A DNA stretch of 64,000 bases, taken from positions 124,001 to 188,000 of IMG/VR virus record IMGVR_UViG_3300036846_000743, one strand, 5' to 3'. This document shows, piece after piece, positions 3,801 to 49,969 of the stretch. The position numbers and the translations under genes are program-made. Position 1 is the stretch's first letter. The number at the start of each line of letters is the position of its first letter. The notes beneath the pieces were generated by a model. That model was given only the letters and a program-made list of their open reading frames with translations, had not been told where the DNA came from and did not search any database.

Positions 3801-3814
3801 GTTACGCAGCGTAA
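3801..3814. promoter_or_regulatory. Palindromic intergenic element GTTACGCAGCGTAA (copy 1 of 4)
   Basis: Intergenic, 15 nt upstream of 3786; near-identical copies at 32473, 39590, 49956. Confidence 0.6.
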
Positions 3815-3826
3815 GCACCGAGAGCC

Positions 3827-4678
3827 TCAGCCAAGACCGGAAATGATAGCACGGCCGGTCTCTCGCGCGGTCAAGTAAGGACTGATACTGTGTGCCTTGG
3901 CGCCATTGTGAACAAGAAAGTTCTCGACGTAGGGACCGAATACCGGACGCAGATCCTTGACCAGCGCGACGATGTCACCGTCGTCGGCGATATTGAACCA
4001 CTGCTTCACCGTCATGCCTGGCCAGACGCCAAGCCCAACCACAGGAGCAGGCTGGAGCCGATCGAAGATCAGGTTCCTGATGCCCAGTGGCGATCCCAGC
4101 GTGATCAAGGTCGTGACTGGCCAATCATGATGGGCGCAGAGGCATTCATACGCGACCACGGACCCCAGCGAATGCCCGATCAGCACGCGGGTATCATCGG
4201 TGACTACCTTCTCGACATGCTCCAGCGCCATGCGGCGAAAGCCGTCATCCTGAAAGTACGCGGACACTTGCTTCAAGTTGAAGATGAGCGCCTTCTCTGC
4301 GAGCCCAGCGAAGAAACTAGAATGGCTCAGTGCCTCGAGAGCGCGCTGGACAAACCAGGAAGTGTGGCCCGTCACAAACCGATCGGGGGGTACAACCTTG
4401 TCAGGCTCGGCCTTGGCAGCGGCAAGGCACCAGGCGTTAAGCAGATCTTCCTCGAAAGGATCGGTGATGGAGTCCGCATCATAGAGCTGCTCGCTTGGCA
4501 TCAGGCCCTTGGGCCGGAAAAGCTCAGCATAAAAAGTACAGACCAGGTCCTCGGGCGCCGGAGGTGTTCCCCCGGCGAGCGAGATACCGTCGCACAGGGG
4601 CGCGAACCATTCCTGATGGAGAATGCTCGGCCCCTTGTACTGCTGGGCAATACCGTGGACGGCAACAATCCGGGACAA
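3827..4678 (-). CDS. Alpha/beta hydrolase
   Basis: VAVHGI oxyanion motif, GHSLG nucleophile elbow, LITLGSP, DGDIV acid and late AHS histidine. Confidence 0.85.
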   Translation of the reverse strand: MSRIVAVHGIAQQYKGPSILHQEWFAPLCDGISLAGGTPPAPEDLVCTFYAELFRPKGLMPSEQLYDADSITDPFEEDLLNAWCLAAAKAEPDKVVPPDRFVTGHTSWFVQRALEALSHSSFFAGLAEKALIFNLKQVSAYFQDDGFRRMALEHVEKVVTDDTRVLIGHSLGSVVAYECLCAHHDWPVTTLITLGSPLGIRNLIFDRLQPAPVVGLGVWPGMTVKQWFNIADDGDIVALVKDLRPVFGPYVENFLVHNGAKAHSISPYLTARETGRAIISGLG

Positions 4679-4694
4679 CTGGTCTTCTTCCTTG

Positions 4695-5189
4695 TTAGCC
4701 CCAAAGCCGATGAATACGACGGGCTACTAGCACGAAAACAAGCCCGATGGCGAATAACAAGAATGTACTCGGTTCCGGAACTCCGCCGCCGCCACCACCC
4801 GGCGGCATGACCGGCGGACATTCCGTCGCCAGGTCCTGCTTGATGAGCGCACCAAGCACGGGATGATAGTACGTGAACCTGGCCGGAGCTAGTTCGTACC
4901 TGTGGCGGAGCATGTCGAAGAACGGCGTGTTCGGCAGTTCGCCGACACATTCGGCAGGGGTGAACAGCCCGGCCAGGGCCGGATGAAAGTGATCGAAGCG
5001 CGTGGGATTGATCTCGTACCGGTGTTCCAGCTCGCGCCACTCGGTGACGAATGAGTGACGAACCGCCCTTCCATCCACGATCAAGCCATAGGTGAGCGGC
5101 ACATGGCCGTACTCTGAATATGACTCGACTCCAGCCAGATAGAAGGGCTGCTTGTACACGGGCTCCTGATGTACGAATACCGTTCCCAC
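4695..5189 (-). CDS. PEP-CTERM sorting-domain protein
   Basis: C-terminus GGGGGGVPEPSTFLLFAIGLVFVLVARRIHR = VPEP + TM helix + basic tail; internal duplication HRYExxPxRFxxxHPxLxxL twice. Confidence 0.85.
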   Translation of the reverse strand: MGTVFVHQEPVYKQPFYLAGVESYSEYGHVPLTYGLIVDGRAVRHSFVTEWRELEHRYEINPTRFDHFHPALAGLFTPAECVGELPNTPFFDMLRHRYELAPARFTYYHPVLGALIKQDLATECPPVMPPGGGGGGVPEPSTFLLFAIGLVFVLVARRIHRLWG

Positions 5190-9158: not shown

Positions 9159-10385
9159 TCAGCGAAAGAGCGAATTAGCCACCCCGGTGATCAGTCCGCC
9201 CCAAACACCAAGGCTCTGGAGCTTCTCCTGAGCTTCCGGCTTGAGCCCGGCCAGCGCACCTAAGATCTTGCCTGCGGCCATGCCGGTAAGCCAGCCCTTG
9301 CCGGCGCCGATCGCTGCCGACGTCGCGACTTCGAACGGGCTCACCTCATTCGACTGGGTCGCCGCAGCCGTGCCTGACAGCAGGCCGGCCGTCGCGGCTG
9401 CCGCATAGGGCGGCGTATACATGGGCTGCTCGTTGGTCCCCCAGGGACTCTTGGTGCCAAAAGCATTGGCTGGGTTACGCACGTCATTCCAGATGACCTG
9501 GTTGAATGCATCAACTGGAATGCTGCGCATGAACAGGGCGCCAGTCTGGCCGAAGTCCTGGGCTGCTTTACGGAACCATGGGTTAATTCTGGGTTCAAGC
9601 GGATCAAGGACCGACGCTCGCTTGAGCCCGGGCAGCACAGGAGGCCCCATTTCCTCTTCGAGATCCTGATACGACACCTCGTGCTTCGGCAAGGGCGGAA
9701 GCGGCGTCCCTGGCGTACCCGGCGCACCGGTCGCTTCCGGCCCCATCAGGGGATGCCTGGTCCCCTGCATCCCCGGAAAGGCACCCAGTCCCTTGGCGCG
9801 TCGCTGAGCAGTCCACTGCCACAGCCCGGGCGCGGCACCCAGCCCGGCACCGGCCAGCCCCAGAGTGATTGGCAGGTGACCCCGCTCGGCATACTCCTCG
9901 GGGAGAAACTTCTCGGCCAGCCAGCCAGTACCATAGCCCAGGCCGCCGCCGATCAGGCTGTTGACGATCGCCGCGTGCAGCCCGGTGGGGTGCTTGCCAC
10001 CGATCAAGTGCTGGAGGGCAAAACCCGGGCGAGCCAGCGGCGCCAGATAGCCGTTGGCTGCCTTGACCAGGACCCAACCCTCGACAGGCGGCGGTGCAAT
10101 CGGCTCGACGTACAAGGCCACACCGGGCACATCCGGCACATCGGGCAGCGCCTCCCAGTCGGCCCGCTTCTCGATGTCGGCGACATGAGCCCAGGCGGTC
10201 CTGGTATCCGGATGCCACCACAGCTGATCCTCGGGGCCGGCAGCGCGCGTGGCCCAGGCTGCCAGCCGACATGCGGCCGGAGCAGCCTTCTTGTAGAGCG
10301 CCACGACCATATCGGGCACTCGCCGCCACGCTTCGTACTCGACGGCATCGACGATTGCGCCAAGCTGCTCTTCGAGCCGGCCCAT
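9159..10385 (-). CDS. Glycine-zipper protein with K-x-A motifs, putative virion protein
   Basis: 408 aa; motifs KKAA, EKRA, VKAA, LKRA, RKAA; Gly-zipper hairpins GGGLGYGTGW, GLAGAGLGAAPG, GAGKGWLTGMAAG. Confidence 0.75.
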   Translation of the reverse strand: MGRLEEQLGAIVDAVEYEAWRRVPDMVVALYKKAAPAACRLAAWATRAAGPEDQLWWHPDTRTAWAHVADIEKRADWEALPDVPDVPGVALYVEPIAPPPVEGWVLVKAANGYLAPLARPGFALQHLIGGKHPTGLHAAIVNSLIGGGLGYGTGWLAEKFLPEEYAERGHLPITLGLAGAGLGAAPGLWQWTAQRRAKGLGAFPGMQGTRHPLMGPEATGAPGTPGTPLPPLPKHEVSYQDLEEEMGPPVLPGLKRASVLDPLEPRINPWFRKAAQDFGQTGALFMRSIPVDAFNQVIWNDVRNPANAFGTKSPWGTNEQPMYTPPYAAAATAGLLSGTAAATQSNEVSPFEVATSAAIGAGKGWLTGMAAGKILGALAGLKPEAQEKLQSLGVWGGLITGVANSLFR

Positions 10386-10680: not shown

Positions 10681-13600
10681 TCAGCCGAAGAGACTCCAGG
10701 GCCGCTGATAGCCTGGCGACCCTACTCTGCGAAGAACTTCCCGGAATTGTTCGTTGAGTTCTTCTTTTCGCTCGGACATCCGCTCGAGCACCTCGTCGGC
10801 TGATGGCCGGGGCTTCTCGCCGAACACCTTGCCGAGCCAACCGGGCGGCGGCATCTTTGCAACAAACCGCTGTATCTTCACGTGTCGTAATTCCTCGGGC
10901 AAGCCTTCATGGCTGTCGAACCGCAGCCCGCGGCCGCGCGCCTGGCCAAGTCTGGCCTCATTCCAGTGCGGATCGAGTAGCTGGATCAGCTGGGTGCCCT
11001 TGGCCGAGATTCCCTCGGCGGCGGCTGGCCCCAGCAGGAGCACCCGGCTCCGGCCCGAGTTGTAGTCATCCAGCGCTTTCTTGCGGGCCTCTTCGGGCAT
11101 GCTGCCGTGGAATTGCCCGAACGGGATCTTGGCCTCAGCCAGGCCGGCGGCATAAGGCGTCAAGCCGGCGTCGATGAAGTTCGAATAGATAATGGCCTTG
11201 GCTCTCGGATCTTTCGCCAGAGTTTCTTGGAGATGGCTCATGGCCGACTGGAGCTTGGACGACGTCTGGAACGCCCGGATCGGGTCGTGCGACGAGTGAT
11301 ACGGATAGAGTGATAACGCAGCCTGACGTGGCCCCGTCATGAAGGCAGACAGATGGCCGATCTCCTGCTTGGTGAGCGGATAGTCGTTGGACAGCTTCCA
11401 GCGCATGAGCCAGGGGAGCTTGCCCCACATCAGCTTGTAGAAGTCCTGCTGCTCGGAGCCCATGTCGACTTCGACCCGCTCGTCCTTGGTCGAGACCCCT
11501 TCGGGAGTCCGGGACGGCTGATAGTCCACGTGCCCTTCGAGCATGCGCTCCAGGTCTTCCTCGTTCTGGATCTTGGGCACCTTGACCGGTTTGACGCCCT
11601 GGAGCCAGCCGAAGAACCCGGGATTGACCGTCTCGTTGCCAACATACTTCTTGGTGAACGCGCCCGGACTCATCTCCTCGCCGCGCAGGATCGATAGCGG
11701 CACGGCCAGATCACTGGGTGCGTTCACGATGGGCGTGCCCGAAAGCAAGATCCGGTGCGGGGCTCGCATGCCCAGCTCCATCGCGGCCCGGGCACCGGCC
11801 GACTGCGGGTTCCGGATCCGCTGAACTTCGTCCATGATGACGGTGTTCGGCGTGACCGATGGCTGCTTACCCATGCCAATCCCAGTATATGACATCACGT
11901 TGGTCGGTGTAGACTGATCAGTAAATTTACCTAATTCCTTGAGGTAATTACCTCTGAGGCTCGCCGGCACGACAGCTGTGAATGGCCCGCCGGTCTCCTC
12001 GGCGGCAGCCAGGCTGGCCAAGGACTTTCCTGAGCCCAGACCATGGTAGACCAGCAGGTTCTGGCCCTCGCCGACCCGTTTGGCCACGCGTTCCTGCTGG
12101 GGCTGGAGCCGGACCCAGGGCAGCAGGTCGGCCCGCTTCTCGCCCCAACTGTGACCACACCTGTTGCACTTACCGTCGTCCGGATCGCGCTCGAGCCGGG
12201 CATGGCACTTCGGGCAGCACTCGCCGGCCGGACACGGGTCGCCCTTCTCGTCGGTGGGGCTGCCGACGGCCCGGGCCCAGGCAGCAGCCTTCGCAGGCAA
12301 AAGCCTGATCCTGGACTTGTCGATCGGGTCTCCCTTCGGGGCCTTCTCTCCGTTATAGACCACGGCATCCAGGTCTTCCGGTGTCACGCGCACGGCCCTG
12401 ATATGACTCAGTCCCTCATCGATGTGCCGGGACAGGCGGTGCCGGCCATCCCAGAGCGTACCATCGATGCCAACCAGAATTGGCTTGTTCATGTTGACGG
12501 CAGCGTATCGCTTCTTCGAATAGCCAGTGCTTGCCGACCGGTTGGGCTTCTCGATGTCGCCCAGGGGAATGTTCTCGACCTTGCGCCCGGCCGTACGGCT
12601 GACCAGGTCATCGATGTCGTAGGTCTTGCCGCCCCTGCTGACGGTGTTGGTGCGAACCCAGTCGGCGACCTTGAGCCGACCACCGACCATGGCGAGGGAA
12701 GCATGGATCCTGAAGCCCGTCGGCTTGTGAGTCAGGCCGGCCATGTCCCGGATGGTCGAGTCGATCTTGAACTCACTGGGGCGCTCGTGGATCAGCCTGG
12801 AGAGGATCTGGTACTTGGCACGGTAATTCTTCCGGTCACTCTCGGCCTTGGCCAGCTTCAGGTCGGCCAGGGCCGGATGCACCTTGGCGGTCTTCTCTTC
12901 CTCTTCTTCGATCTGCTGGATGACCTCGGGGATGATCGCATTGGGTTTGCCCAAGAGCGATCCCTGGATCGCGTCCCACCATGATGGGGCCGGCGGCGGC
13001 AGCCGGCGACGACTGCGCGGGGTGACAACAGGAGGTGGCGGATCAGTGATCCCGAGCAGCCCGGCCAGCTTCAGCGTCGCAGCAGTGTCAGCATGGCTGG
13101 CCACCTTGTTGATGTCTTCGTGCAGGCCCAGGAACGACGGCACCCGCAGGGCGCCTGATGGCAGCTTCTGCTGCGCGCGGACCCGGGCCACCCGGCCGAT
13201 ATAAGCCGACGGGTCCCTGGCGATGTCGGCCAGGGTCTCGTCGCTGAAGCCCGTGCCAACCCGGCCCACGGTCTTGCCCGGCTCATGGCCGTAGGTCAGG
13301 CCGCCCACAGTCGCAGCCCGCTGGCCTTCGCCCGGAAAAGTCCCGGTGACGTGTACATCGTGTTCCTCGAAGAGCTTGGCCTTCGAGGGCACGCCGGTTC
13401 TGGGATGATAGACAATTCCCTCTTCGGTAAGAGGATGTTCACCCGATCGGATCATGTCCCAGAGCTTGGTTGCGCTTGCTGGATCTCTGAATTCCTCGGA
13501 GACGTGGAACTTATCTGAAGGCAGGTGTCCAGCAATCTCTTCAAGCATTCGCCGACGATCTGATCGGGATGTAACGGCGGGATCGATGGGCTTCTTGCCG

Positions 13601-16600
13601 TACTGCTGAACGTCGTAGAGCATGTTGCGAAGCGTGAGGCCCTTTGCCTTCTGGAGCTGGAGACTGCGCGCAATACTGGAATTAAGTAGCTGGCCGACAT
13701 CCTGGGGACCGGTTCGGCGAGTTGTGACTTCAGGATCGCCTGGAAGGCCAGCAGCCCCGCTGCCACGCGGTGTTCCGTTGGCGTGTACCGTTTCCAGCCC
13801 TTCATGGCCCGTACCCACATCCGGACCACCATCAGGCGATCTTCGTCCAGTCTCCGTATCCGGTTGCGTTGCCTTACTTCCTCCTCCTGGTTGTAGTCGT
13901 GAGGCATACAGCTCGCCCTTCAAGATCGATCCTTCGAGGTGCCTGGGGACCGGGACCTCGGGGCGCCCGCCAAACAGGCGTTCCGTGTGGAAGATGGGCC
14001 GGCCGGTTGTCTTCGACGTCCTGAAGGATAACGCCTCGGCATGACCGCCTGCTAGTCTGATGAGCTGACTGGCGCCATCGACCTTGGCTTCTACCGTGTC
14101 GCCTTCCTGCATAGCTTTCAGGGCTGGCTCGACATCTTCGGGCGCGATCTTCTTGTAGCGAACTTTTTCGTAAGGGACCTGGTCCCGAGGGGTCGTGTTC
14201 ATGAGCAGCCAGTTCTTGTTGCCCCAGCCCTTGGGCCGGACCAGCGTGAACCGCTCGGGATGTCTCTGATGGGCCGTCGTGAAGTGTATTGACTCAGGAG
14301 TGGCTTTCGTGATCAGGATCTGGCCCTTGGTATGGGTCTTGACCGTGCCCTTGCCGTAGCCCTGGGGAATTTCTCCCTCGAAATTCCCGTACTCATGCCG
14401 ATGCACGGGCTGCTGCACGGCAAGATGTCGTTCCCCCGGTGGGGGTACTCCCTTGCGCGCGGCCCAGGAGAGCAGGCCCATGTCCGGGTTGCCGAACCTG
14501 ATGTCATGATGAAGACCCGCGCGCTCGGCTTCGTGCCTTTGCACTATGTAGTCCAGCATCTGGCCAACCTGGAGCTTATCAAGCTGGCCCATGTTGGACC
14601 TGGACGGCAGCCCGGGAGCGTAGTCGGCTTCGGCCTTCTTGCCCAGCTGGTAAGCCAGCGCCGGCGCTGCGACGCCACCAGCGATCATGCCGAGCATCGA
14701 CATGAGATTGCGGCGGCGCTCCTGCCGGCGCCGCTCGTAGTAGTCAAGCTCATCCTCGTCGTCGGGCGACACGACCCCGCCCAGCGCGCCGCCGAGCAAG
14801 TGACCACCCAGGAGGCCGGCGCCAGCGGCCCCGGCCAGGGTCAAGACCCGGTTGCGGATCTCGGGATCGGCCCAGCTCTCGCGTACCCCTGCCCACATGC
14901 CGGCCTGGGTTGCCGGCCGCGCCGCCGCCAAGAAGTCGGCTGGCCTGGGCGACCCGGCCGCCCTGGCAGCCACCGCGATGGGATCCTGCGATAGCGCCGC
15001 TCCGGGGCCAAGGCCCAGCCAGCTGCGGGCCTGCTGCTGTACCGTGTTGGCCGTCTGTCTGGCGATCTGGGACTGCATCTCCGGGCGGCTCGCGATATCG
15101 ACGGCCATGCTCTGGAACTCGGGCTTCTGGGCCATCTCGAGCAGCTTTGCTTGCAGCGCCGGATTGTTTGCCGCCTGCGAGATAACTTTCTGCCCTTCCG
15201 GAGTGCTGGCGAAGTTCGTGAGCGCCTGCACGACTTCGGGCTTCTGGGCCATCTCGCCCAGCACTTTCTGTCCCTCCGGGGTGCTGGCATAGTTCGTGAG
15301 CGCTCCCGTGACTTCGGGCTTCTGGGCCATCTCGCCCAGTGTTTTTCGCCCTTCCGGAGTACCGACATACTTCGTGAGTGCCCCTACGACTTCGGGCTTC
15401 TGGGCCAGCCCGCTTATGGTCTTCTGTCCCTCCGGGGTACCAACATACTTCGTGAGTGCCCCCATGACTTTGGGCTGCTGCGCCAACCCGCCCAGCGCCT
15501 TCTGTCCCTCCGGGGTACCGGCGTAGTTGCCAATGGCCTCCGTAACTGCGGGCTGCTGCGCCAGCCCGCCCAGTGTCTTCTGTCCCTCCGGAGTACTGGC
15601 GAAGTTGGTGATGGCCTCTGTAACTTCGGGCCGCTGGAAGAACCCGCCTATGGTCTTCTGCCCCTCTGGGGTGTTGGCGTAATTGGTGATGGCCCCCATG
15701 ACTTCGGGCTTCTGGAAGAGCCCGCCTATGGTTTTCTGCCCTTCTGGAGTGCTGGCATAATTCGTGATCGCTTTCGTGACTTCGGGCTGATCAGCCAGTC
15801 CAGCCAAGGTCTTTTGCATATCCGGATTGGTCAAGGACTGGGTAAACGCTTTCTGTACTGCTGGGTTGGCCGCGGTATTCGCAAGGAACTGCTGCATCTT
15901 GGGATCGTTCAGGGTCTGCGACAGCATCGCCTGGCCCTGGGGATTGTTCAGCTGCTCCCCGATGAACTTCTGCGTCTCGGGACTGGTCACAAGCTGTTGC
16001 ACGCCCTTCTGGACAACCGGACTATCCATCACGTGCTGCCGCATCCGGGGATCGGTGAGTGTCCGGGTGAGCGGCTGAACGATCGGGCTGGTCATGCTGG
16101 CAATCGGGTTGGCCTTCATCTCGGGCGTGTACTTGGCTATGGCCTCATCGACAGCCTTCTGGTAAATGGGCGCGGGATCCTCCTTCATGGGGATGAACTG
16201 GCCGGCCGCACTCATCGCGAGACCGAACGGCGAGGCCAGCCGGGCAGCATCCACGAAGCCCATGGTATTGGGATACTTCTGGCGCGCCGTGTAATAGTCG
16301 TGCCGCAGGAACGGGATCGTGGACTTGGCAGCCACGTCGCCCACCATCTTGCCGATGGCCGACTCGTCGGGCTTGCCGGTAACCCAGCTCACTCCCGGAA
16401 TATTCCGGGAAGCCCAGCTCACTCCTGGAATTCTGTGCAGCAGCTGGGTTGCCACCGGGCCGCGCAGGCCCCGCAGTTCCTCCTTGGCCCACGGCTGCTT
16501 CAACTCCTTGATGCCTGCTTCCGACAATCCCAGCCCCCTGCCCAGCATGGTCGCTTCCTGGCTCTCGAAGACCGGCTGCGTCGCCATGTTGTAGCCGGCC

Positions 16601-19600
16601 AGGCCCAGGCCAGTACCGGTCGCAGCAGTGCTCCCGTAACGCAGCGTCTGGCCCAGCGCCTGCCGCTGCCAGTCCCAGCGACGCTGCGGTGGCTGCGGGG
16701 CAGGGTTATTCAGGAGCTTACTCCACGGAGTAGTCGCAGCTTGCGGAACGCCACCTTTCGGGATGGGGACTTTGGGAGTGACTTCCCGGTGCAGGCCCGG
16801 GATCTGCGGGCTGAAGGTGAACCTGGCAGCATTGCCGGCGCCGATAAGAGGGCGCTTCCAGCCCTCGCCACTCACGCCCCAGAACTGACCCGGCGCCGCG
16901 CCGGACATGTGATACGCGCCACGGCCTATGGCACCAAGGCCCCCCTTGGCCCGTGACCACAGTCCTCCCGCCTCCTTGGTCATCGCCACCTTGAGATTGG
17001 GATCAATCCTGGCGACGTTGTGAACGAGCCCCGGCATCCGCCTGGTCGCAGCACCCTCGATAACCTGCCAGTCCGGCGCTGCAAACATATCCTTCCAGTA
17101 CTGCTCGTCGTCACCAAGGTTGCTCGGATTCAGGGTGTTCCACCATGAGTTGACGTGGCCCTTGAACCAGTCCAGCGCCTTCTTGGCCTCGGCCGGCGAT
17201 GTCACTTCCCTGCCGGTGTTCTGGGCATATACCCGCTTGACGAGGGCCAGCCGGGGATCAAGCTCGTCGGGCGAAAAGAGATAGTTCAGGTTATGTTTCG
17301 GTCCGAATGACGGCGTACCGCCCAGCGTCTTGACCAGCTTCTGCCCCGACGACGTGATCTCCGGATCAATCTTCGCGAGATTGGCCAGCTCCTTGGCCGT
17401 GCCTCCACGCTCAAGGACCCGCTTGATCGGCGCCATCTGCATTCCCGAGTGCGTCAGCTCGTGCCCCACGGTTTGCTGCTGATCGTGCACATTGACCAGG
17501 CTGTCCTTCGGCATCGTGATGACTGCCGGTGGCGCTGCTGGCCTGTTGACCATAGGCGTGGTCACGCCGGCGTAAGTCTCGTTTTCCGCGCCCGGTATCG
17601 CGATCCCTTTAGGGAGCTTGACGGTCTTCCCGGGCACCTCGACGACCGGTACCTTGGTGTGAAGATCCTCAGCCTTCCAGGGAACCGAGGGGATCGACGG
17701 AGCATAGGGCACCTGCTTGCCTTCCGCTCGCCGGATGACCCCTTCGACACCGCCCTCCATCTTCCCGTAATACGGATCGAGGCTCTCGGCCAGGCTCTTC
17801 ATCTTCGCCCCGGGAGGTACCACGTAAGGCGCATCCGGCGCGGGAGCTACAGGCGGCTGCTGCTGTTGCTGCTGCTGTAGCCGCTGTGCCTTGGCCCTGC
17901 CGATGTAGTAGGCCCCGCCCAGGCCACCCAGACCGGCGCCGTAGATCACGTCGCGTAACGGGTCTTCGCTGCCGAAGAGCTTCCCGAGCCCCCAGCCGCC
18001 CAGGCCGCCGGCACCAGCGCCGATCAGCATCGGAGCATAGTCCTTGAAGTCGCCTTGCTTCTCGCCAAGCCGGGCCAGCCAGCCGACCGCGCGGCCCCTG
18101 TCACCGCGCTGCCGCAGCCGATCCATGAACTCGACCAAAGGATCGCTATCTTCGCCATCTTCGTCATCATCTTCGCCAGCGCCGTCTGGCTTGGGGAAGG
18201 ATATCCGGGTGATGGAGATTCGCTGTATCGAGATCGGTATCCTGATCTTACGTCCGCCGTTATCTTCGCCATTATGTACATCGTCGCTAGCCCCACTGTG
18301 TACATCTTCGTCATCATCTTCGCCGTCGGTGGTTGTAGCTACTTTGGCTATCGAGACGGTATTCCCAGCATCTCCTCGACCGTCCAGCCATTGTGCAACC
18401 GATCGTAGAGGGTGCTCACGGGAATACCCAGCTGCGATGCCCATTGACCGATTGTCTGTTTCTTTCCGTGGAAGGAGAACTGGCGCCGTGGCTGCTTTGG
18501 TCGTGAAAGCGGTATTCCCCGTGACAATCGATAAGTCACGTGTGCCCGCGAGCAACCCAGCAGACGAGCTGCGTCCGCCGTACTCATCTTCTGGCCGTCG
18601 AATTCGACCCAGTGAGTCGTCCGTCGGGGCCGACCACGTGGCGTTAGAATTGCCTCCTCGTCTGTCCAGCCGAGCCTCACTATGCGTCCGCGGAGTACCG
18701 TCGGATGCAAGCCAGTCCGTTCGGCCCACTCGGCGATCGTCCGAGTCTCGCCCTGGCATGTCAGCAGCCGATTGGTTCGCGTATTTCGTGCTTGCGCTTT
18801 CCGTGATGCCCAAATGCAGTTTGCTTTGGAATAGCCCTTGCTGTTTTCCTTTCGCTCGAGGGTCATTCCCGCCGGCCGATCTCCCATGTCCCGGTAGAAC
18901 GCCATGAAGCGCCGCTGCCAACTTTGACACACCGTAATTCCGCGCCCGCCATAATTCTTGTAACCGCGGCTCGTCGGATTCAGACAACGCTCCTTCATCT
19001 TGCACCAAGTCGTGTACGCTCGCGTCTTGACCAGACCGTGATACTGCCGTTTGATCATTGGCCGCCTTGCTGACTTCGTTAGGTTTGAGAACATTGCGAC
19101 GTCTTACACCTATAGTGATGTGAAATTCATGATCACCATTGGGCAAAGGAGTCAGACCATAGCTCTTCCGCAGGGCCTTGAGATCGGAAGAGCTAACCCG
19201 TACAAACCACGCCTTGGACATCTCGGGCCAGCCCTTGGGTTCGACTTCCATGATCGGTCCAAGTTGATAACTGAACGGATGACCACGTTCACTTATCTTG
19301 TCAGGACCACCGATCTTTTTGACATCCTGATCGGTGAGGGCGCTAATATGGGCGTTGAGCACGCCGTCTCGCAGCGGCAATTCAGCGCCTGGCGCTTCGA
19401 GCGCATCGAATAATCCCCTAACAAGTGCATTGGGGACGCTGACCAAACCCCAGCCGCTCGCACTGACATATAACCGACCATGGAGTATGGGTACCGCCAC
19501 CGGGGCGCCGCCTGCCTTGATCAACATACCGTAAGCTGCGGCGACCTGGTAATAGTCCAGGTCTTCGGCTGCCCGGCGGCGAGCCAGTGTGGCCGGATCG

Positions 19601-28766: not shown

Positions 28767-29488
28767 CAGAAGACCTCGATGGCACGGACTTCAAGATCGG
28801 CGATGATGCTTCGGATCTGGTCGAGCGTGTGCCTGTGCGCATTCCAAGCCGGTTCAGCCGGCGGCTGGTTGTTCCGCCACTCCCATCGCTTGGCGTACCG
28901 GGCCGCCACCCGCTCCGCACTCATGTAGTGATAATGCAGCAGCTTCAGGCCCGGGTACGGCAGCATCAGGATAGTGCCTGAAGGAGCGTTGAAATGCGCC
29001 CCCACATAGTAGCCGATCTCGTGGATCTTCTTAGGGTTGAAGCAGCAGTTCTTCGAGTACATGGGGGAGATCTCGCCGCGGCGCACCGCGTAGGGGAGTG
29101 GCTGGTCCGCGATGGGCGGATGGGGCGAGACCATCTGGTAGCCGCTAGGCGACAGAATGGTAGCCTTGAGTTCCCGGGCATGCCGGAGCGCGCCGACCAG
29201 GTCCTCATGATAGAGAAACTCGTCCACGTCGACCACGATCATCCAGTCGTACTGATCACGCCACTTTTTCCAGCCGTCATTCTTGACCCACAGCAGACGA
29301 TATTCGAGTTCCGGTTCGTGCTGCGAAAGCGACAGTACCGTGGCGCCTTCGGCACGCGCCACGGCGGCCGTGTCGTCGTCGCTCTGGTCGTCCCAGATCG
29401 TCACATCGCTGAACTGGCGGTAATACCGGACGAAGTGAAGGACCATATCCTGCTCATTGCGCGCCATCGCAACGGTCAGAATTTTCAT
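28766..29488 (-). CDS. Family 2-like glycosyltransferase
   Basis: Start MKILTVAMARNE; WDDQSDDDT, IVVDVDEFL, LLHYHY. Confidence 0.85.
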   Translation of the reverse strand: MKILTVAMARNEQDMVLHFVRYYRQFSDVTIWDDQSDDDTAAVARAEGATVLSLSQHEPELEYRLLWVKNDGWKKWRDQYDWMIVVDVDEFLYHEDLVGALRHARELKATILSPSGYQMVSPHPPIADQPLPYAVRRGEISPMYSKNCCFNPKKIHEIGYYVGAHFNAPSGTILMLPYPGLKLLHYHYMSAERVAARYAKRWEWRNNQPPAEPAWNAHRHTLDQIRSIIADLEVRAIEVF

Positions 29489-29489
29489 G

Positions 29490-30221
29490 TCAGACGACGT
29501 CGGCGGCCTGGGCGTCGAGCGCGGCGACGACTCCTCGCACGTACTCGGGGGTGTCCGCCAGTTCTCGCCAATAAGTGAACGGTCTATCACGGTCCTGCCA
29601 TGTCCTGTTACGCCGTGCGTAACGCTCGAGGGTGTACTCCACGCCCAGGTAATGATAGTGCAGCAGCTTCAGGCCCGGATAGGGCAGGAGCGTGACGCCG
29701 GCCCCCGTGGGCGCAGTGTAATGCCCGCCGATGTCGAAGTTGATCTCATCGATCTTCAAGGGATTGAAGCAGCAGAGTTTCGAGTACAAGGGAGAGATCA
29801 CGCCGCGGCAGATCTCGTTGGTGATCAGGCCCGAGCCGCGCGGCGGTCGGTCCGAGACCATCTGGTAGCCGCAGGGCGCCAGGACCGTAGCCTCGAGTTC
29901 CCGGGCGCGCCGCAGCACATAGCTCATGTTCTCGTGGTAGAGAAACTCATCGACATCGACGGCGATGATCCAGTCCACGGTCTCCCGGACCGGCTTCCAG
30001 GCGTGATTCTTGGCCCGCAACAGCCGTTCCTGGAGCCCCAGGCTGTCGTCTTCGTCATCGACCGGCCGGACACTGGCCCCCTCGGTGGCTGCGATCGCCG
30101 CAGAATTGTCGGTGCTATGATCATCGAAGATCAGCACGTCGCTGAACTGGCGGTAGTGCCTCACGAAGTAAGGCACTATCGGAGCGTCGTCGCGCATCAT
30201 CGCGATGGTCAAGACCTTCAT
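29490..30221 (-). CDS. Family 2-like glycosyltransferase (tandem paralog)
   Basis: Start MKVLTIAMMRDD; FDDHSTDNS, IAVDVDEFL, LLHYHY; TGATG overlap upstream. Confidence 0.85.
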   Translation of the reverse strand: MKVLTIAMMRDDAPIVPYFVRHYRQFSDVLIFDDHSTDNSAAIAATEGASVRPVDDEDDSLGLQERLLRAKNHAWKPVRETVDWIIAVDVDEFLYHENMSYVLRRARELEATVLAPCGYQMVSDRPPRGSGLITNEICRGVISPLYSKLCCFNPLKIDEINFDIGGHYTAPTGAGVTLLPYPGLKLLHYHYLGVEYTLERYARRNRTWQDRDRPFTYWRELADTPEYVRGVVAALDAQAADVV

Positions 30222-32458: not shown

Positions 32459-32472
32459 GGATCCTCCACTTG

Positions 32473-32487
32473 GTTACGCAGCGTAAC
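32473..32487. promoter_or_regulatory. Palindromic element GTTACGCAGCGTAAC (copy 2; perfect 7-1-7 palindrome)
   Basis: Intergenic, 15 nt upstream of 32458. Confidence 0.6.
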
Positions 32488-32489
32488 GC

Positions 32490-33688: not shown

Positions 33689-33885
33689 GGGTCCCGCCAG
33701 GATGCTTGGTCTACTGGACCAGGCTTATCGTGATCAGCCTGCCCTGATTGCTTTGTTTGCGCATCGGCTGTGACAGCCGGCACGAAGACACCATGACCGC
33801 AAAGCGGGCAAAGATCAAGAAAGCAGTTCAAGCCGCCCTTGATCTTGATGCCGCAGCATGTACAGCACATCGGTATTCTGCGCAT
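33685..33885 (-). CDS. Small zinc-ribbon protein
   Basis: CTCCG...CPLCGH. Confidence 0.55.
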   Translation of the reverse strand: MRRIPMCCTCCGIKIKGGLNCFLDLCPLCGHGVFVPAVTADAQTKQSGQADHDKPGPVDQASWRDP

Positions 33886-33890
33886 GGATA

Positions 33891-36800
33891 TTACCGGCCA
33901 GCTGGCGAGGACAGGGCCAGGGAAGCTGCCTGATGGCCCAGCGCTCCGGCCTTGGTGCCGAAGTGGTCATACATCGGGTCGTCTTTCACGGAGTCAGCGC
34001 CCTTGCCCTTCCAGGCATACTGGCCCCTGTTGGTCCTGACTTCCGGGCCGTGAATCACGCGGACTTTCTGCTTGGGACCGGTGCCGCAAGCTGCGCAAGT
34101 CGAACAGCCGCAGCCGCACTTCAGGGCGGCTGCCCGCTTGACGATGCCCGCCAGCACCCAGGGCAGATAAGCCTCAGCGTGCTTGCGCCTCATGCGCCGC
34201 CTGGAAGTTGCACGCTGCTTGCCCTGGTGCTTGCGGCTCTTCTTGCAGCCCGGATAGTGACTTTCCTTCTCGTGGCCTTCGTGATGTTGCTTTCGCTGTT
34301 TCTCCTGTGCGGCCTCCTCGTGCAGGCGCTGGGCCTCCCCGTAGCCGGCCAGGCCGCCCAGCCCGCCGCCGAGAGCCAGACCGGCAATCTGGCCCGGACC
34401 GCTGACACCGAATATGTCGGGAGACTGCGGCTCGTCGGCCAGCACCCGGCCGCCAATACCGCCCAGGCTGGCCAGGGAGCCGCCCATCATGCCCGTCATC
34501 ATGCCAGTCCCCAGGCCCCGCCCGGCCCCTTCCCAGCGATGACCCTTGCCGGCCATGAGCGCACCCAGCGGCGCCCCGATCGCTGCACCGCCAAGTGTGG
34601 TCGCCCCGATGAGTGGCAGGGTGCCCATGGCGGTCTTGACCCGGCCCTGCTTGGTGCGGCCGTCGGACTCGGACTTGTCATCATCCTTGTCCGACCATTC
34701 CCAGCTCGGCTTGCCCAGCATCCAGTTGCCCAGACCATAACCGCCGGCGCCGCCGCCCAGGGCACCGAGCCCGGCACCGACCGGGACCGCCAGGCCCCGG
34801 AGCCGCTCGGGCAGATACTCGCTCAGGCGATCGCCGGCCAGACCACCCATCAGGCCGCCAGCCGCGCCCAGCGTGCCGACGTTGCTGCCCACCAGGATGC
34901 CGCGGCCCAATCCCTCGCGCTTCTTGCCGTGCGGGGCCATGGTGCTCCCGAGCGTACCGCCGACAAGTCGCCCGGCGCCGCCGCCGATCATGGGGCCGGC
35001 CATGAGCCCTGCGGCCAAGGGGAGTGAAATAGCGCCCTTCTTGGTCATGGGCTTGTGGGGCTTACTGGGCTTTCCCACCTTATGAGGCAGACGGCCCAGA
35101 TGCTCGATGAGTTTCATGACCCGGTAAAACTGGGCTGGATTCACGCTCTCCTTGACCATGGCTTCCTTCCCGGTTGCCTCGGCCTCGATGATCTCGGCCA
35201 GCCGGCGGCGACGTTCGAGCAGCTTGCGCTTGCGCTCCTGCTCGGGCGTCTCCTGGTTCAAGTACGAATATAGCCCGTAGCCGCCGGCACCCAGGGCGCC
35301 CAGTCCGGCGCCGACCGCATAGGGCAGCGGCCAGTTCTTGATGTCCTGCATGGCACCCTGGCCCCAGCCCTGGACCTTGTTCCAGGCGCCCTGGCCCATC
35401 GTCTTGGCCTGGTCCCACCACGGCGGCGACGCCGGACCAGGCGTGGTTATGCTCGAAGTCATCGCGGCGCCGGGCGAACCACCAGTTGGCGCCGGGTTGA
35501 GATCACCTGTCGCGATTGCCCCGCCAGCAGCCGGTGCCGGCGTATCGTCGGGGAGCTTCGCACGATCACTCACACCAATCTGGCTTCGCTTCTCATATAC
35601 TCTTCCCCCTATGGGGGAAGAGTACATGCCAGCTCCCTTTTCGGCCATCGGTGCGGCCATGACGGCCTTGGTGTCGATGCCTGACAGCTGGGGGCTCGGG
35701 GCGAACGCGTCGCACATCTGGGTGGGGGCCACAGGCGTCTGCAAGAGCTGGCAGTCCTGGCCGGTGAAATTCACGCACGAAGCACACGAGACGGCCGCCG
35801 AAGTCGCATCCCGCAGGTTCACGTCTTCAGGGCTAGGCGCGTTATCACCGCCGTCTCCGCCGCCATCACCGTCGTGCTGGTTCGGGGCCGGCGGCATGGC
35901 CACGTCGCCAGGCTCGGGGTTCAGGGGCATGCCCATAGGGCGGTCCTCGTCGTCTTCCATGGGGCCGGCGAGCTTGGATAGCCAGGCCAGCTTGATAAGC
36001 CGGGCTCGAAGCGGCACAAGCTGCGCTGCACTCTTCTTGTGCGGCTTGTGATCTTTGTCTCCCTGCTGGGCTTGCTGCCGACTCGCGTCGAGAGCCACAC
36101 GAAATGACTTGGGAAGATAGAGCGGCTCGGTCATCCGGTTCCAGAGATTGGGCTGCGTCCGGTACTCGTCGATCCGCATGGGGTTGAGGTTGACATGCCC
36201 GATATGCTCGGGCTGGCGCGGACTGGGCATTATCATCGGATAATACTCGTCCTTGTGCTTGTCCTTGGTCACGGTATGCATGGGCTTGCCATAGCCGAAG
36301 AGCCCTCGCTTCTCGCGAGACTTCTTCTTGCCCTTGCCAGCCGGCTCGCCCAGCATGCCGCCTGATAGCCGCCAGCCGCCGTAGCCGCCCAGACCGGCAC
36401 CCAGCGTACTGCCAAGCGTGGTAGCGGCATTAGTCGGGATCGCACTGGTCAGACCGGAAAGAGCGCGGCCTCCGAGAGCGCCTGCCAGACCGCCCAGACC
36501 GGCACCCAGGCCCGTGGCTGATCCCCGGATCACGCCCCGACCAAGACCTTCAGGCGCATTACCGCGGCCAAGACCTAGCAAGCCACCCGCGGTACCACCC
36601 AGTGCTCCACCCGCAAGAGCCAGCCCGGGAATACCGAACGCGCCGAAATTCGCAAACGACTGCGATGGATCGTCGCCGTGATAGTCCGGCGGATAATAAG
36701 GCGTCCGGGTCGTCCCATCCGGCGACACCTTCCAGCCGAATGGCGCATCCTCGATGCCGGCTTTCTTCTGTCGTTTCTTCCTGTCTGGAGTACCAGCACC

Positions 36801-39525: not shown

Positions 39526-39589
39526 CCTCCGTGCAGAGCGGGCTCACACAGTATCAGCGACCAAGGCTCAGCCCGCAAGCACCTCAGTC

Positions 39590-39603
39590 GTTACGCGGCG
39601 TAT
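39590..39603. promoter_or_regulatory. Palindromic element GTTACGCGGCGTAT (copy 3)
   Basis: In the spacer immediately after the stop of 39603..40256. Confidence 0.5.
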
Positions 39604-40256
39604 CACGTGTCGATGACCCGCACTCGCGGCGGTCTCGGTACAGCAATTCCCGGCTCAGGGGCCGGTAGTTTCACATTCTCGACCAGGGCGGCGAACTTGC
39701 CCGAGGCCAGCATGCCGTTATCGGCGGCCTCCTGCAAGACCAGGTCCCTGTCGATGCCGTCGTTGTTGCCGGCCGCCAGCTTGATCAGGTCCCGCATCAC
39801 GGACTTGAGCGGCCTGAGCTGGACGGTCGAATCCCAGTCCACCGGCGTCCCGAAGGGCTTCGTGACCGGCGGAAGCGGATTGTCGAACCCCTTGGACCAG
39901 GCCCAGGGCGACATCCCCAGCGCGAGCAAAAACGGCGGCACGATCTCGCGCTCGATCAGCTCCCGGACGCCGGTCTCGATCAGGTCCAGGAGCGTGTCGA
40001 TGTGCAGGGCAAGGCAGCGACACCGGAAGTCGACAGCGAGCACGCCGTCGGTCGTCTTCTGGGGCCGGCTCACTTCCATGCGCTCGATGATCCGCTCGTG
40101 CTCCCACCATTCATTGGGGATCACGACCCCCGGGGTGAGCACCCCGCGGCCCATGATCCGCAAGTAAGGATCAGCCTTGGCCTGACGCCGCAGTTCCGTG
40201 TGCAGCTCCGAGAGGATGACCGACGCGACCGGCGTGCCTGGCGGCGGAGCAGCCAT
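39603..40256 (-). CDS. Hypothetical protein with C-terminal RVRVIDT tail
   Basis: 217 aa, SD AGGAG. Confidence 0.75.
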   Translation of the reverse strand: MAAPPPGTPVASVILSELHTELRRQAKADPYLRIMGRGVLTPGVVIPNEWWEHERIIERMEVSRPQKTTDGVLAVDFRCRCLALHIDTLLDLIETGVRELIEREIVPPFLLALGMSPWAWSKGFDNPLPPVTKPFGTPVDWDSTVQLRPLKSVMRDLIKLAAGNNDGIDRDLVLQEAADNGMLASGKFAALVENVKLPAPEPGIAVPRPPRVRVIDT

Positions 40257-47927: not shown

Positions 47928-47951
47928 TGGTCGTCTCCGTTCGCTGGCAGC

Positions 47952-49946
47952 TCAGACATCCACTATCCGCACCCGCCGAGGTCGCTTCAGCATCAGCCCC
48001 GTCGGCACCGGCAGCGGTGCCGCCGCGCCTTGCTTGCCATACTGCTGGGCTAGTACCTGCTGTCCTCCCTGCATCTGGGCCTCCTGCTTCTGGTCGTCCA
48101 TCCGCGACTTGACGAGCGCGTGCAACGTAGGATCAGTCTTCTTGAGGGAGATCAGCTCGCTCTGTCGCTGACTGTCGGGCAGGCTCTGAAGCTGGCCCGC
48201 GATCTCCTCGGCCTTGGCCATCAGTTCCTGGGGTGTAACCGGCGTATTGGCACCACCACCTGCTGCGCCAGCGGCCCCTCCACCGCCTGGAGGCGCGCCA
48301 CCCGGAGGAGCGCCGCCACCGCCGCCAGCGTCCGGAGGTGCACCTCCTGCTGGAGCACCTCCCGGCGGCGCTCCACCCGCAGCAGCGCCTTGGACCGCCT
48401 GTTGCATCTGTGCTTCATCGGCCATCTCCTCCTGCATCTTCTGGGTCTCGTCGGCAACGAACTTCTCTTCCTCCAGCATCTGCTTCTGCTCATCCTCGAA
48501 GTCCATGCCGACCGAGCGAAGCCCGGTGGTTTGCGAGATCTGCTTGCCCATCATGAGCTGGAGCTTGGCCGCCTGACGGTTCATGTCGTCGGCGTGAGTG
48601 ACCTTCATGAGCCGCGCGGTGACTGGCTCCCAGTTCAAAGCCTTGGCGAGCGATTCGACCAGCCAGCCCAGGAAGCCATTCATGTTGTGCGTGAGCGGTG
48701 CCCAGTAGCTCTCGAAGAGCCGCAGGGCCGGCGGAGCCGCCGACATGGTCAAGGTCCCCTTGTACATGTCGGCCGGGATACCAGCTGCGTTCAACAGGTG
48801 ATCAATGCCCTGGTCAAGCAGGTCCTTGGGTGCCAGCTGGTTGGCATCGCCACCCATGGCCTTGTATTCCAGTGGGAACGGGATCACGTTCCAGCGGGCT
48901 GGATCTTTGCGGCGCGCCGCCAGCATGCGGTTCACCCGCGAGACGAACGTACCCATGTTGGCACCGAGCACGGGATCCTGGGCCGCCGGATCGGCAGCCC
49001 CGCCCTTGGACGCCGGCATGATCACCCGGAATGGGATCACGTAGTCCAGGGCGATGGCTTCGTTGTATCTGTGCAGGACCTGGACGTACCAAGCCTGGCC
49101 GAAGTTCGACAGGACTTTCGAGATGCCCCAGCCCTTGTTGCGGACACCGGCTAGAGCATCGTCTTTCATGTGATAGATGATGCCGGGGTCGAACTGGAGC
49201 ATCTTGTTGTTCTTGACCGCCTGGATCACTTCCCAGTTGGCACGCTCGAGATGGAACAGCTTGCCGCGGCGAATGTCCTGCCGGTAGTCCTCGGGGATCT
49301 TCCAGATGTAGGACGTATCGTCGGTCAACGTGTCATAGAGGATCTCCATGTAGTGGGGGTCCCACCGCTTGACATGAACGTCCGCTTCCTCGCCAGAGCG
49401 ACGATCGATGTGATGCCAGGCGCCGTTGTAATTGCACTCCGAGTTGGGACACTTGGCATGGAAGTCGAAGTCCTGCCACTGAAAGTGGAAGTCAGGTGTG
49501 CTGTAAACTTTTCGTAAGGGCCACTCGGTATAGCAGCGAGGGCAGCTCAGATAGCGCCGGAACGGTATAACTACAGATGTGAATGAGTTTCCGTAGCATG
49601 CATAGTCCGTGGCCACGTAGTTCAGGACGCTCTTGTAGTCGATCGTCTCGTCAAGGAACTCCTTGAATTTATCTTTCTCCTCGCGGCTGGCATCCTGGGA
49701 GCTGACTTCGATATCGGTGATGAAGTAAGAGACGATGCGCCTCATGGCCTCCCGGTACACGCCCATCTTGCTAAAGATGAACTCGCACCAGTACATTATA
49801 TCTCTGGGATGCTCAGGCATCACAGTTGAAGCCATGTCGCAAAATGGATCTGGGAAATTCTCGCTGCCTCGCATCGTGAAGTTCCCCGATGCGAAGAGCT
49901 TGTTGTCGCTGACGGTAAGACTCATCGTGTCGTCCTTGACGGCCAA
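47952..49946 (-). CDS. Probable portal protein with zinc-ribbon insertion
   Basis: DYACYGNSF and IYHMK..LAG...WGISKV resemble portal motifs; CPRC..CPNSEC insert; Q/E coiled coil and G/P-rich tail; possible start at 49925. Confidence 0.6.
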   Translation of the reverse strand: MAVKDDTMSLTVSDNKLFASGNFTMRGSENFPDPFCDMASTVMPEHPRDIMYWCEFIFSKMGVYREAMRRIVSYFITDIEVSSQDASREEKDKFKEFLDETIDYKSVLNYVATDYACYGNSFTSVVIPFRRYLSCPRCYTEWPLRKVYSTPDFHFQWQDFDFHAKCPNSECNYNGAWHHIDRRSGEEADVHVKRWDPHYMEILYDTLTDDTSYIWKIPEDYRQDIRRGKLFHLERANWEVIQAVKNNKMLQFDPGIIYHMKDDALAGVRNKGWGISKVLSNFGQAWYVQVLHRYNEAIALDYVIPFRVIMPASKGGAADPAAQDPVLGANMGTFVSRVNRMLAARRKDPARWNVIPFPLEYKAMGGDANQLAPKDLLDQGIDHLLNAAGIPADMYKGTLTMSAAPPALRLFESYWAPLTHNMNGFLGWLVESLAKALNWEPVTARLMKVTHADDMNRQAAKLQLMMGKQISQTTGLRSVGMDFEDEQKQMLEEEKFVADETQKMQEEMADEAQMQQAVQGAAAGGAPPGGAPAGGAPPDAGGGGGAPPGGAPPGGGGAAGAAGGGANTPVTPQELMAKAEEIAGQLQSLPDSQRQSELISLKKTDPTLHALVKSRMDDQKQEAQMQGGQQVLAQQYGKQGAAAPLPVPTGLMLKRPRRVRIVDV

Positions 49947-49955
49947 GGTGCATCA

Positions 49956-49969
49956 ATACGCTGCGTAAC
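49956..49969. promoter_or_regulatory. Palindromic element ATACGCTGCGTAAC (copy 4, inverted orientation)
   Basis: Intergenic directly upstream of the portal gene. Confidence 0.55.

What the first reader, a model, noticed from the sequence alone, without database searches (positions are those of the whole stretch)
3801..49969. Recurrent intergenic palindrome GTTACGC-N-GCGTAW upstream of four genes: candidate phage promoter or operator
Seen at 3801-3814, 32473-32487 (perfect 7-1-7), 39590-39603 and 49956-49969, all in short spacers. Two copies sit exactly 15 nt upstream of start codons and one precedes the portal. Half-sites (GCGTAW on the coding strand) occur near 27615 and 43760. It can fold as a 6-bp stem with a 3-nt loop. 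Inference: a site for a dimeric regulator, or a promoter element for the phage RNAP (N4 virion RNAP uses small hairpin promoters, cited as analogy only).
Basis: partly seen in the sequence, partly recalled or inferred. Interest (0 to 1): 0.6.

Follow-up and report, generated by a model that had tools for sequence, protein, structure and literature searches.

The report
Conserved 17-bp palindrome at phage gene starts
A 17-base palindrome recurs 14 times, almost always squeezed between genes, in an uncultivated 226-kb soil phage that encodes its own RNA polymerase and sigma factor; it is a real, selected protein-recognition site, most likely a transcription control signal, but its exact job cannot be settled without experiments.

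Summary
All four window sites are real. The full element is a 17-bp dyad, CGTTACGC-N-GCGTAACG. The whole 226-kb phage genome has 14 copies against 0.26 expected, and only 2 one-mismatch variants. Ten copies lie between co-directional ORFs, two lie in the first ~10 codons of genes, and two are deep inside genes. Copies are spaced more evenly than chance. A 75%-identical relative keeps the motif at 8 orthologous junctions while the flanks diverge.

The phage is not N4-like. It encodes split beta/beta' RNAP genes and a divergent sigma-70-family factor. Its cultured distant relative Arash packs such proteins in virions. More distant relatives lack this palindrome but carry their own 12-20-nt signature motifs. 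Two G006 copies sit at the same orthologous junctions.

RNA hairpin, intrinsic terminator, N4 hairpin promoter, REP/RAYT, ParB and host-regulon readings are each weakened. Best reading (about 0.5): a duplex-DNA site bound by a phage-encoded symmetric factor that controls transcription at the heads of gene blocks. Promoter and operator roles cannot be separated without TSS or binding data.

The parts
3800..3816 (.). Palindrome copy (G000 127800-127816). It lies 10 nt after the upstream stop and 13-16 nt before the start of a 149-aa gene. That gene heads a block running into the RNAP beta/beta' genes.
32472..32488 (.). Near-perfect palindrome copy (G000 156472-156488). It lies 1 nt after the upstream stop and 13 nt before the ATG of a 131-aa gene, in a 31-nt gap.
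39589..39605 (.). Palindrome copy (G000 163589-163605). Its outer triplet is the TGA stop of the upstream gene. The next start is 72 nt downstream.
49954..49970 (.). Palindrome copy (G000 173954-173970). It lies 6 nt after the stop of a 59-aa gene and 28 nt before the portal ATG.
29607..29624 (.). Variant copy with both 8-nt arms but a 3-nt spacer. It overlaps the 3' end of one ORF and sits just upstream of a family-2 glycosyltransferase-like gene.
1..1329 (-). 3' part of a 1156-aa gene (G000 121859-125329). It is one of three adjacent genes matching jumbo-phage RNA polymerase beta/beta' families, so it is a candidate reader of the signal.
47952..49925 (-). Portal gene, downstream of the 49954-49970 copy. 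It was used to anchor the search for relatives.

Best explanation
The element is a 17-bp dyad-symmetric recognition site on duplex DNA (8-1-8, CGTTACGC-N-GCGTAACG). It is read with high specificity by a phage-encoded factor that binds symmetrically, most simply a homodimer. It marks the 5' boundary of roughly a dozen gene blocks on a genome whose genes nearly all run one way. These blocks include the portal, the sigma-factor/baseplate block and the block leading into the RNAP genes. Binding there controls transcription entering or starting at the downstream gene. It could recruit the phage's own sigma-containing RNAP so that transcripts begin at the 3' edge of the site, or it could gate or repress transcription there. 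Shown: reality, selection, symmetry, specificity and placement of the site. Inferred: that a protein dimer binds it, and that the output is transcriptional. Within this reading I put about 55:45 on activating/promoter-defining versus repressing/operator.
For: Over-representation: 14 copies against 0.26 expected, the top hit of an unbiased palindrome screen in G000 and G001. All-or-none: 14 exact cores against 2 one-mismatch variants, with a control of 8. Information is confined to 17 symmetric positions, with no flanking element. Either half may be the weaker one, with no orientation bias relative to genes. Placement: 10 of 14 copies lie between co-directional ORFs in a genome that is 91-92% coding. 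5 of those 10 sit in gaps of 60 nt or less, which offer only 5.6% of non-coding placements. 2 more lie in the first ~10 codons of genes. The centre-to-start distance peaks at 20-23 nt. Spacing is over-dispersed: minimum gap 7.1 kb (P 0.0006), CV P 0.003. Purifying selection: at 8 orthologous sites in G001 the motif is 88% identical against 64% for the flanks (Fisher 2e-8), and the centre base varies freely. Machinery: split RNAP beta/beta' genes and a divergent sigma-70-family gene directly downstream of one copy. In the cultured relative Arash, beta, beta' and sigma are abundant in virions (PMC10585845). Family context: relatives lack this palindrome but have their own signature motifs at gene heads. 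Two G006 copies occupy the same orthologous junctions as G000 copies, upstream of the portal and of g130 (hypergeometric P 0.01). Arash's signature, GGTATAAGTA, is directional: 25 of 26 copies lie on the strand of the next gene, mostly 15-60 nt upstream of its annotated start (one precedes a tRNA, one is ~146 nt away), like a sigma-type extended -10 promoter.
Against: No TSS or expression data exist; only the source soil DNA run holds the sequence. A palindrome is unusual for a promoter, and sigma-type promoters are bipartite and asymmetric; nothing conserved lies where a -10 or -35 partner would be. An all-or-none site set is unusual for a repressor regulon. In the longer gaps the site hugs the upstream stop codon (0-12 nt) rather than the downstream start. 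Two copies lie deep inside genes. One relative (G009) has a palindrome, AGATATCT, spread through coding DNA (29 of 42 copies inside genes), so palindromic signatures in this family need not be transcriptional. Gene calls are from my own simple caller.
Confidence: 0.5

Rival explanations
1. Self-sufficient promoter read as an extruded DNA hairpin (N4-like mechanism), or otherwise directly by the phage RNAP, with initiation about 9-11 nt from the dyad centre.
For: The site is strictly conserved and all-or-none, like phage-RNAP promoters. SD sequences start 1-5 nt after the 17-mer. One G000 gene (g130) has an SD-less ATG 2 nt after it. G006 and G010 have similar SD-less starts at or just after their motifs. 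The 3-nt-spacer variant keeps the arms. The two G001 variants give T-G rather than C-A mismatches only on the template strand.
Against: There is no single-subunit vRNAP. 9 of 14 copies can form only a 4-5-bp stem. There is no orientation preference. The copies are genome-wide rather than clustered at an early end. Two copies lie downstream of well-supported start codons. The core is GC-rich and hard to melt.
Confidence: 0.12
2. RNA-level element in polycistronic mRNA: a small hairpin acting as a processing site, 3'-end stabiliser, terminator or translational operator.
For: It lies in intercistronic gaps, usually 0-12 nt after the upstream stop. One copy (G000 219342) sits in a 13-bp stem of -24.4 kcal/mol, z -4.4.
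Against: Folds of seven other sites are no better than shuffles, and several do not form the expected hairpin. Sequence, not pairing, is conserved. The outer positions are unpaired in most copies without compensation, and both G001 variants create C-A mismatches in the mRNA sense. There is no U-tract, while canonical hairpin-plus-T-run terminators exist elsewhere in the genome. No Rfam family matches.
Confidence: 0.08
3. DNA-level site unrelated to transcription, such as a target for nicking, modification, recombination, topoisomerase or genome organisation. It would be placed in gene junctions only because a 17-bp fixed sequence is hard to fit in coding DNA.
For: Spacing is regular. Specificity is all-or-none, like enzyme recognition sites. 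The cores contain type-II-like palindromes (GCNGC here, CCGCGG in G006, GATATC in G009). G009's motif lies mostly inside genes. Three to four G000 copies lie in coding DNA.
Against: The sites prefer the tightest gene junctions over the large non-coding regions that hold most free space. The centre-to-start distance is shared across lineages. Positions are orthologous with G006's different motif. Arash's and G010's signatures are directional at gene heads.
Confidence: 0.2
4. Selfish or neutral repeat (REP/MITE-like) or a homing-endonuclease target that has spread through intergenic DNA.
For: It is lineage-specific, intergenic and palindromic. In G001 a low-GC ORF with a weak, sub-threshold HTH match and an endonuclease-like tail (judged by eye, not family-tested) occupies exactly the portal-upstream junction where G000 has the motif.
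Against: No RAYT/Y1 transposase is present. Only 17 bp are shared, with no flanking repeat. 8 of 9 alignable sites are kept in G001 under clear constraint. 14 self-targets would be hazardous to the phage.
Confidence: 0.05

Closest known systems
Lambda-type 17-bp operators bound by HTH dimers (Cro/CI); from general knowledge
   Same: 17 bp, two 8-bp arms around a free central base pair. One arm is often weaker. It sits at gene heads.
   Different: 14 dispersed, nearly identical copies rather than clustered graded operators. No repressor gene and no adjacent promoter consensus were found.
Global regulon sites of plasmid RK2 (KorB OB 6-1-6 palindrome, about 12 copies; KorA operators); from general knowledge
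   Same: A short, exact palindrome with a free centre, about a dozen copies across the replicon. Some are promoter-proximal and some lie inside genes. Orientation does not matter.
   Different: No ParB_N/KorB-like protein in G000, G001, G006 or G007. The replicon is a lytic-type jumbo phage with its own RNAP.
Phage-RNAP-specific promoters (T7-group 23-bp promoters; phiKZ-type early promoters); from general knowledge, plus the Arash signature seen here
   Same: Highly conserved and lineage-specific, one per gene block, immediately upstream of the SD or start. The phage encodes the polymerase.
   Different: Those promoters are asymmetric and directional. This element is a palindrome with no orientation bias, and two copies lie after start codons.
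   Same: A small inverted repeat with a potential 3-nt loop upstream of genes.
   Different: There is no N4-like RNAP. Most copies form only 4-5 bp. There are 14 genome-wide copies rather than three at the early end.
T4 PeSL mobile regulatory cassettes / REP elements; from general knowledge
   Same: Repeated intergenic palindromic sequences at gene boundaries, many next to lineage-specific genes.
   Different: Only 17 bp, with no promoter-plus-stem-loop cassette, no RAYT, low copy number, and strong positional conservation.

Membership tests
N4-type hairpin promoter | Phage encodes a giant single-subunit virion RNAP | tested here: not met
   PF00940 is absent, although the control genomes also gave no match. 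The 2977-aa ORF carries 2H/LigD/ligase/SNF2 domains. The RNAP genes are split beta/beta' types.
N4-type hairpin promoter | 5-7-bp stem with a 3-nt loop at every promoter, in one orientation, clustered upstream of early genes | tested here: not met
   9 of 14 copies pair only 4-5 bp. Folds are no better than shuffles. The copies are spread over the whole genome.
HTH-dimer operator | Dyad symmetry of about 14-18 bp with a non-specific centre | tested here: met
   8-1-8 layout. The centre base varies within and between genomes.
HTH-dimer operator | Cognate DNA-binding regulator encoded by the element | tested here: inconclusive
   No HTH_3 or ParB_N above threshold. The ORF at window 56758-57123 has sub-threshold HTH_20/MarR hits but no G001 homologue. 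Most of the proteome has no family match.
HTH-dimer operator | Overlaps or adjoins a promoter | not testable with these tools
   No conserved flanking element and no RNA data.
Phage-RNAP-specific promoter | Conserved motif at a fixed short distance upstream of genes, specific to the phage lineage | tested here: met
   Centre-to-start distance peaks at 20-23 nt. The motif is absent from relatives, which have their own motifs.
Phage-RNAP-specific promoter | Directionality consistent with downstream genes; transcripts start there | tested here: inconclusive
   The palindrome shows no bias in which arm is stronger. G006 and G007 motifs occur in both orientations. G010 and Arash motifs are directional. 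TSS cannot be tested.
Intrinsic terminator | Stable GC-rich hairpin followed by a U-tract | tested here: not met
   Stems are weak and there is no T-run. True terminator-like sites lie elsewhere.
REP/RAYT element | Y1 (RAYT) transposase present; high-copy palindromes with a conserved 5' tetranucleotide | tested here: not met
   PF01797 is absent from four genomes. There are only 14 copies.
ParB/KorB-parS/OB system | ParB_N-domain protein | tested here: not met
   PF02195 is absent from G000, G001, G006 and G007, with positive controls.
Host regulon operator (e.g. LexA-type box) | The same box recurs at many loci in some bacterial genome | tested here: not met
   The 17-mer gives 90 scattered single hits across 185,579 species genomes, about chance level by my rough estimate, with no genome showing dispersed copies.

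The most novel reading that the evidence does not exclude
The palindrome is itself the promoter signal of a virion-type, sigma-containing phage RNA polymerase, or of a dimeric specificity factor that recruits it. That would be a dyad-symmetric promoter architecture that has diversified lineage by lineage across a large uncultivated family of ~200-kb phages. Transcripts would start at its 3' edge, some of them leaderless.
Probability: 0.22. Interest if true: 0.8.

Novelty: new variant of a known kind. Interest (0 to 1): 0.55.

Why it matters
This phage belongs to a large, almost wholly uncultivated family. There are 152 portal relatives in IMG/VR, many on contigs of ~185-230 kb. In all five relative genomes examined, nearly all genes lie on one strand and the phage RNAP genes are present; a sigma-factor homologue was found in four of them. 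How such phages schedule about 250 co-directional genes is unknown. A handful of exact, lineage-specific signals at the heads of gene blocks is the most visible handle on that programme. If the palindrome proves to be a promoter or a gate for the phage polymerase, it would supply an orthogonal, highly specific DNA signal-and-reader pair. It would also give a rule for annotating transcription units in related metagenomic phages. The distant cultured relative Arash offers a laboratory entry point.

Tried and rejected
1. Near-identical search of the phage collection with 20 kb of the window: no match.
2. N4-like identity: rejected.
3. Literature word search for the half-sites: nothing relevant.
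4. RNA or TSS evidence: only one DNA run, the likely source soil metagenome, holds the sequence.
5. Whole-record pattern search of metagenome contigs behind L152/L153/L160/L164: not held. The IMG/VR copies were used instead.
6. Idea that the portal-upstream gap is a family-wide regulatory hot spot: rejected. Most relatives have a 10-20-nt gap with no motif there.
7. Idea that G007's motif is a hairpin with covarying outer pairs: my script mis-indexed the pairs. A hand recount found 5 of 12 sites extend the stem, about chance, so the idea was dropped.
9. ParB_N, HTH_3 and RAYT family searches: negative.
10. Host-regulon scan: chance-level hits.
11. Rfam: nothing in the window.
12. Pfam/PHROG scans of genes next to the sites: mostly no hits.
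13. Not run for lack of a defined candidate: protein-complex prediction, structure prediction and the large protein searches.
14. Only 125 of 181 kb of Arash and 180 of 194 kb of G010 were examined.
Full report
WHAT THE WINDOW IS. The window is bases 124001-188000 of a 226,073-bp IMG/VR virus record, G000 (61% GC). It came from a soil metagenome. Nearly all genes lie on the minus strand. It is not an N4-like phage. The 2977-aa ORF at window 10681-19614 carries 2H-phosphoesterase, LigD, ligase and SNF2-helicase domains. No T7/N4-type RNAP domain was found, although the control genomes also gave no match for that family. Three adjacent genes (G000 116389-118338, 119827-121803 and 121859-125329, the last reaching window 1-1329) match jumbo-phage RNA polymerase beta families. 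One of them is 33% identical over its full length to the annotated RNAP beta gene of Salmonella phage Arash. G000 70212-71003 encodes a divergent sigma-70-family protein. It hits PHROG 351 at 9.5e-7, several NCBIfam sigma families at about 1e-6, PDB SigA chains at 1e-3, and the Arash sigma gene gp10 at 3e-5. In Arash virions, beta, beta' and this sigma factor are among the most abundant proteins (PMC10585845).

THE OBSERVATION. The conserved unit is longer than reported: 17 bp, CGTTACGC-N-GCGTAACG. All information lies in these positions and none in the flanks. The genome holds 14 exact cores (TACGC-N-GCGTA) against 0.26 expected. This is the top hit of an unbiased screen of all 5- and 6-nt-arm palindromes (P 7e-20). 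Only two one-mismatch variants exist, fewer than the eight given by a reversed-pattern control, so the site set is all-or-none. A fifteenth copy (window 29607-29624) keeps both arms but has a 3-nt spacer.

PLACEMENT. Coding density is 91-92%.
- Ten copies lie between co-directional ORFs.
- Two lie within the first ~10 codons of genes (G000 38962 and 197315). Both are in the same frame, encoding T-Q/P-R-N/K, and the same holds in the relative G001.
- Two are deep inside genes: 90243, and 101171, which encodes RRYAAY in a Cys-rich protein.

Five of the ten intergenic copies sit in gaps of 60 nt or less. Such gaps offer only 5.6% of possible non-coding placements. In two cases the outer triplet of the motif is the stop codon of the upstream gene. 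The distance from dyad centre to start codon peaks at 20-23 nt. One gene (g130) has an SD-less ATG 2 nt after the motif. In the longer gaps the site lies next to the upstream stop (0-12 nt). Either arm can be the weaker one, with no bias relative to gene direction. Copies are spaced more evenly than chance: minimum gap 7.1 kb (P 0.0006) and coefficient of variation P 0.003. Downstream genes include the portal, the sigma-like gene heading a baseplate block, a block running into the RNAP genes, a MazG-like gene and a gene at the edge of the replication module.

CONSERVATION. G001 is a 161-kb IMG/VR contig: portal 90% identical in protein, about 75% in DNA, collinear with G000. It has 10 exact cores plus 2 one-mismatch copies. 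At eight orthologous junctions the motif is kept (113 of 128 positions) while the flanks diverge with indels (331 of 519; Fisher 2e-8). The central base changes freely. One G000 site, upstream of the portal, is replaced in G001 by an inserted low-GC ORF with a weak, sub-threshold HTH match and an endonuclease-like tail judged by eye. G001 has four sites that G000 lacks. Turnover therefore exists but is slow.

FAMILY CONTEXT. The portal finds 152 relatives in IMG/VR, many on contigs of ~185-230 kb. Five large ones lack the palindrome. Each of the four I then examined, and Arash, has its own over-represented signature.
- G006: a 20-bp quasi-palindrome with a CCGCGG core. It has 12 copies, in both orientations, just 5' of starts.
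- G007: GGTTCTTATTTACC. It has 12 copies in both orientations, some right after terminator hairpins.
- G010: a 7-3-7 palindrome, GACTTAA-AAA-TTAAGTC. It has 18 copies, 17 in the gene direction. They follow terminators and directly precede an SD, or contain the ATG itself.
- G009: AGATATCT, 42 copies, mostly inside genes.
- Arash: GGTATAAGTA, 26 copies in 125 kb. 25 lie on the strand of the next gene, mostly 15-60 nt upstream of its annotated start (one precedes a tRNA, one is ~146 nt away). There are many one-mismatch variants, like a sigma-type extended -10 promoter.

G006's motif occupies two junctions orthologous to G000 sites, upstream of the portal and of g130. Given 93 shared genes, this has P 0.01. 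The lineage-specific signatures therefore look like functional counterparts that change together with whatever reads them.

TESTS OF READINGS.
- RNA hairpin: seven of eight site folds are no better than shuffles, outer positions are unpaired without compensation, and both G001 variants give C-A mismatches in the mRNA sense.
- Intrinsic terminator: there is no U-tract, and real hairpin-plus-T-run sites lie elsewhere.
- N4 hairpin promoter: the polymerase type is wrong, most stems are too short, and the copies are not clustered.
- REP/RAYT and ParB/KorB: the defining proteins are absent.
- Host regulon: the 17-mer occurs at about chance level across 185,579 species genomes.
- No Rfam family matches in the window.

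BEST EXPLANATION AND ITS LIMITS. The symmetry, the free centre, the exactness and the orientation-independence point to a symmetric protein reading duplex DNA. The tight placement at gene heads, the shared centre-to-start distance across lineages, the positional orthology with G006, and the directional promoter-like signatures of Arash and G010 all point to transcription control by the phage's own machinery. I put about 0.5 on this. Within it I lean slightly toward a promoter-defining or activating site over a repressor or gate.

Three points argue against a plain promoter: the palindrome itself, the two copies downstream of start codons, and the stop-proximal position in long gaps. Two points argue against a plain operator: the all-or-none site set and the lack of any nearby promoter consensus. 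A DNA-level role unrelated to transcription keeps about 0.2, because of the regular spacing, the enzyme-like specificity and the G009 case.

All gene coordinates outside annotated records come from my own codon-bias caller, and several starts were corrected by hand.

NOVELTY. Dispersed exact palindromes that control gene blocks are known from plasmids and temperate phages. Lineage-specific promoters are known for phage polymerases. A dyad-symmetric, all-or-none signal in a phage family with a sigma-containing virion-type RNAP matches none of them fully. I file it as a new variant of a known kind. The more novel reading, a palindromic promoter for that polymerase, has about 0.22 probability.

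Noticed in passing
window 54556-54565 (minus); also G000 9429-9438, 52283-52292, 53181-53190: A second conserved intergenic motif, AAAAC-CTGTCAT(A/C)TA. It is always in the gene direction, lies in larger gaps, and is kept at orthologous places in G001 (3 copies). It looks like a directional, extended -10-like promoter class distinct from the palindrome.
   Followed up: partly
G000 70212-71003 (outside the window; locus L144:10212-11003, minus): Divergent sigma-70-family factor at the head of the baseplate block, directly downstream of a palindrome copy. It is conserved in G001, G006, G007 and G009 and is homologous to Arash gp10, which is packed in virions.
   Followed up: yes
window 10681-19614 (minus): 2977-aa polyvalent protein with 2H phosphoesterase, LigD phosphoesterase, DNA ligase OB, SNF2 helicase and GerD-like segments. 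It is conserved in G006 and G007.
   Followed up: partly
window 51733, 41993 and 62839 (minus sense); G000 15119, 55296, 199610: Canonical intrinsic-terminator-like sites (GC-rich hairpin plus T-run) in intergenic gaps. Termination signals therefore exist separately from the palindrome.
   Followed up: partly
G001 about 155,300-156,000 (locus L274): A low-GC ORF of about 200 aa, with a weak, sub-threshold HTH match and an endonuclease-like tail judged by eye, is inserted between the small conserved gene and the portal. It sits exactly where G000 carries a palindrome copy.
   Followed up: partly
G009 (loci L276-L286), whole genome: The palindrome AGATATCT (with W flanks) occurs 42 times against about 1.5 expected. 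It is over-dispersed and mostly inside genes in all three frames. This is a DNA-level signal of unknown role in a relative.
   Followed up: partly
G009 115,520-116,050: A long tandem array with 15-nt periodicity (units such as CAGTTCGGTACCYAG), probably a repeat-containing gene.
   Followed up: no
window 21424-23736 and 28766-29590 (minus): Glycosyltransferase genes (GT1/GT4-like and GT2-like) inside the structural region. They may be involved in DNA or virion glycosylation.
   Followed up: no
G000 209681-213331 (locus L149:1681-5331, minus): A 1216-aa protein joining a uracil-DNA-glycosylase-superfamily domain to a family-A DNA polymerase.
   Followed up: no
G000 27519-29459 and 32858-35819 (plus strand): Plus-strand genes in an otherwise one-stranded genome. 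Those at 27519-29459 and 32858-34024 are conserved in G001 and G006. One palindrome copy (29761) lies at the convergent junction.
   Followed up: no
Sorangium sp. chromosome NZ_CP150363.1 (locus L304:2352-2388): Two copies of the exact 17-mer lie 20 bp apart in a bacterial genome. This was the only multi-copy hit of the genome scan and is probably a local repeat.
   Followed up: no
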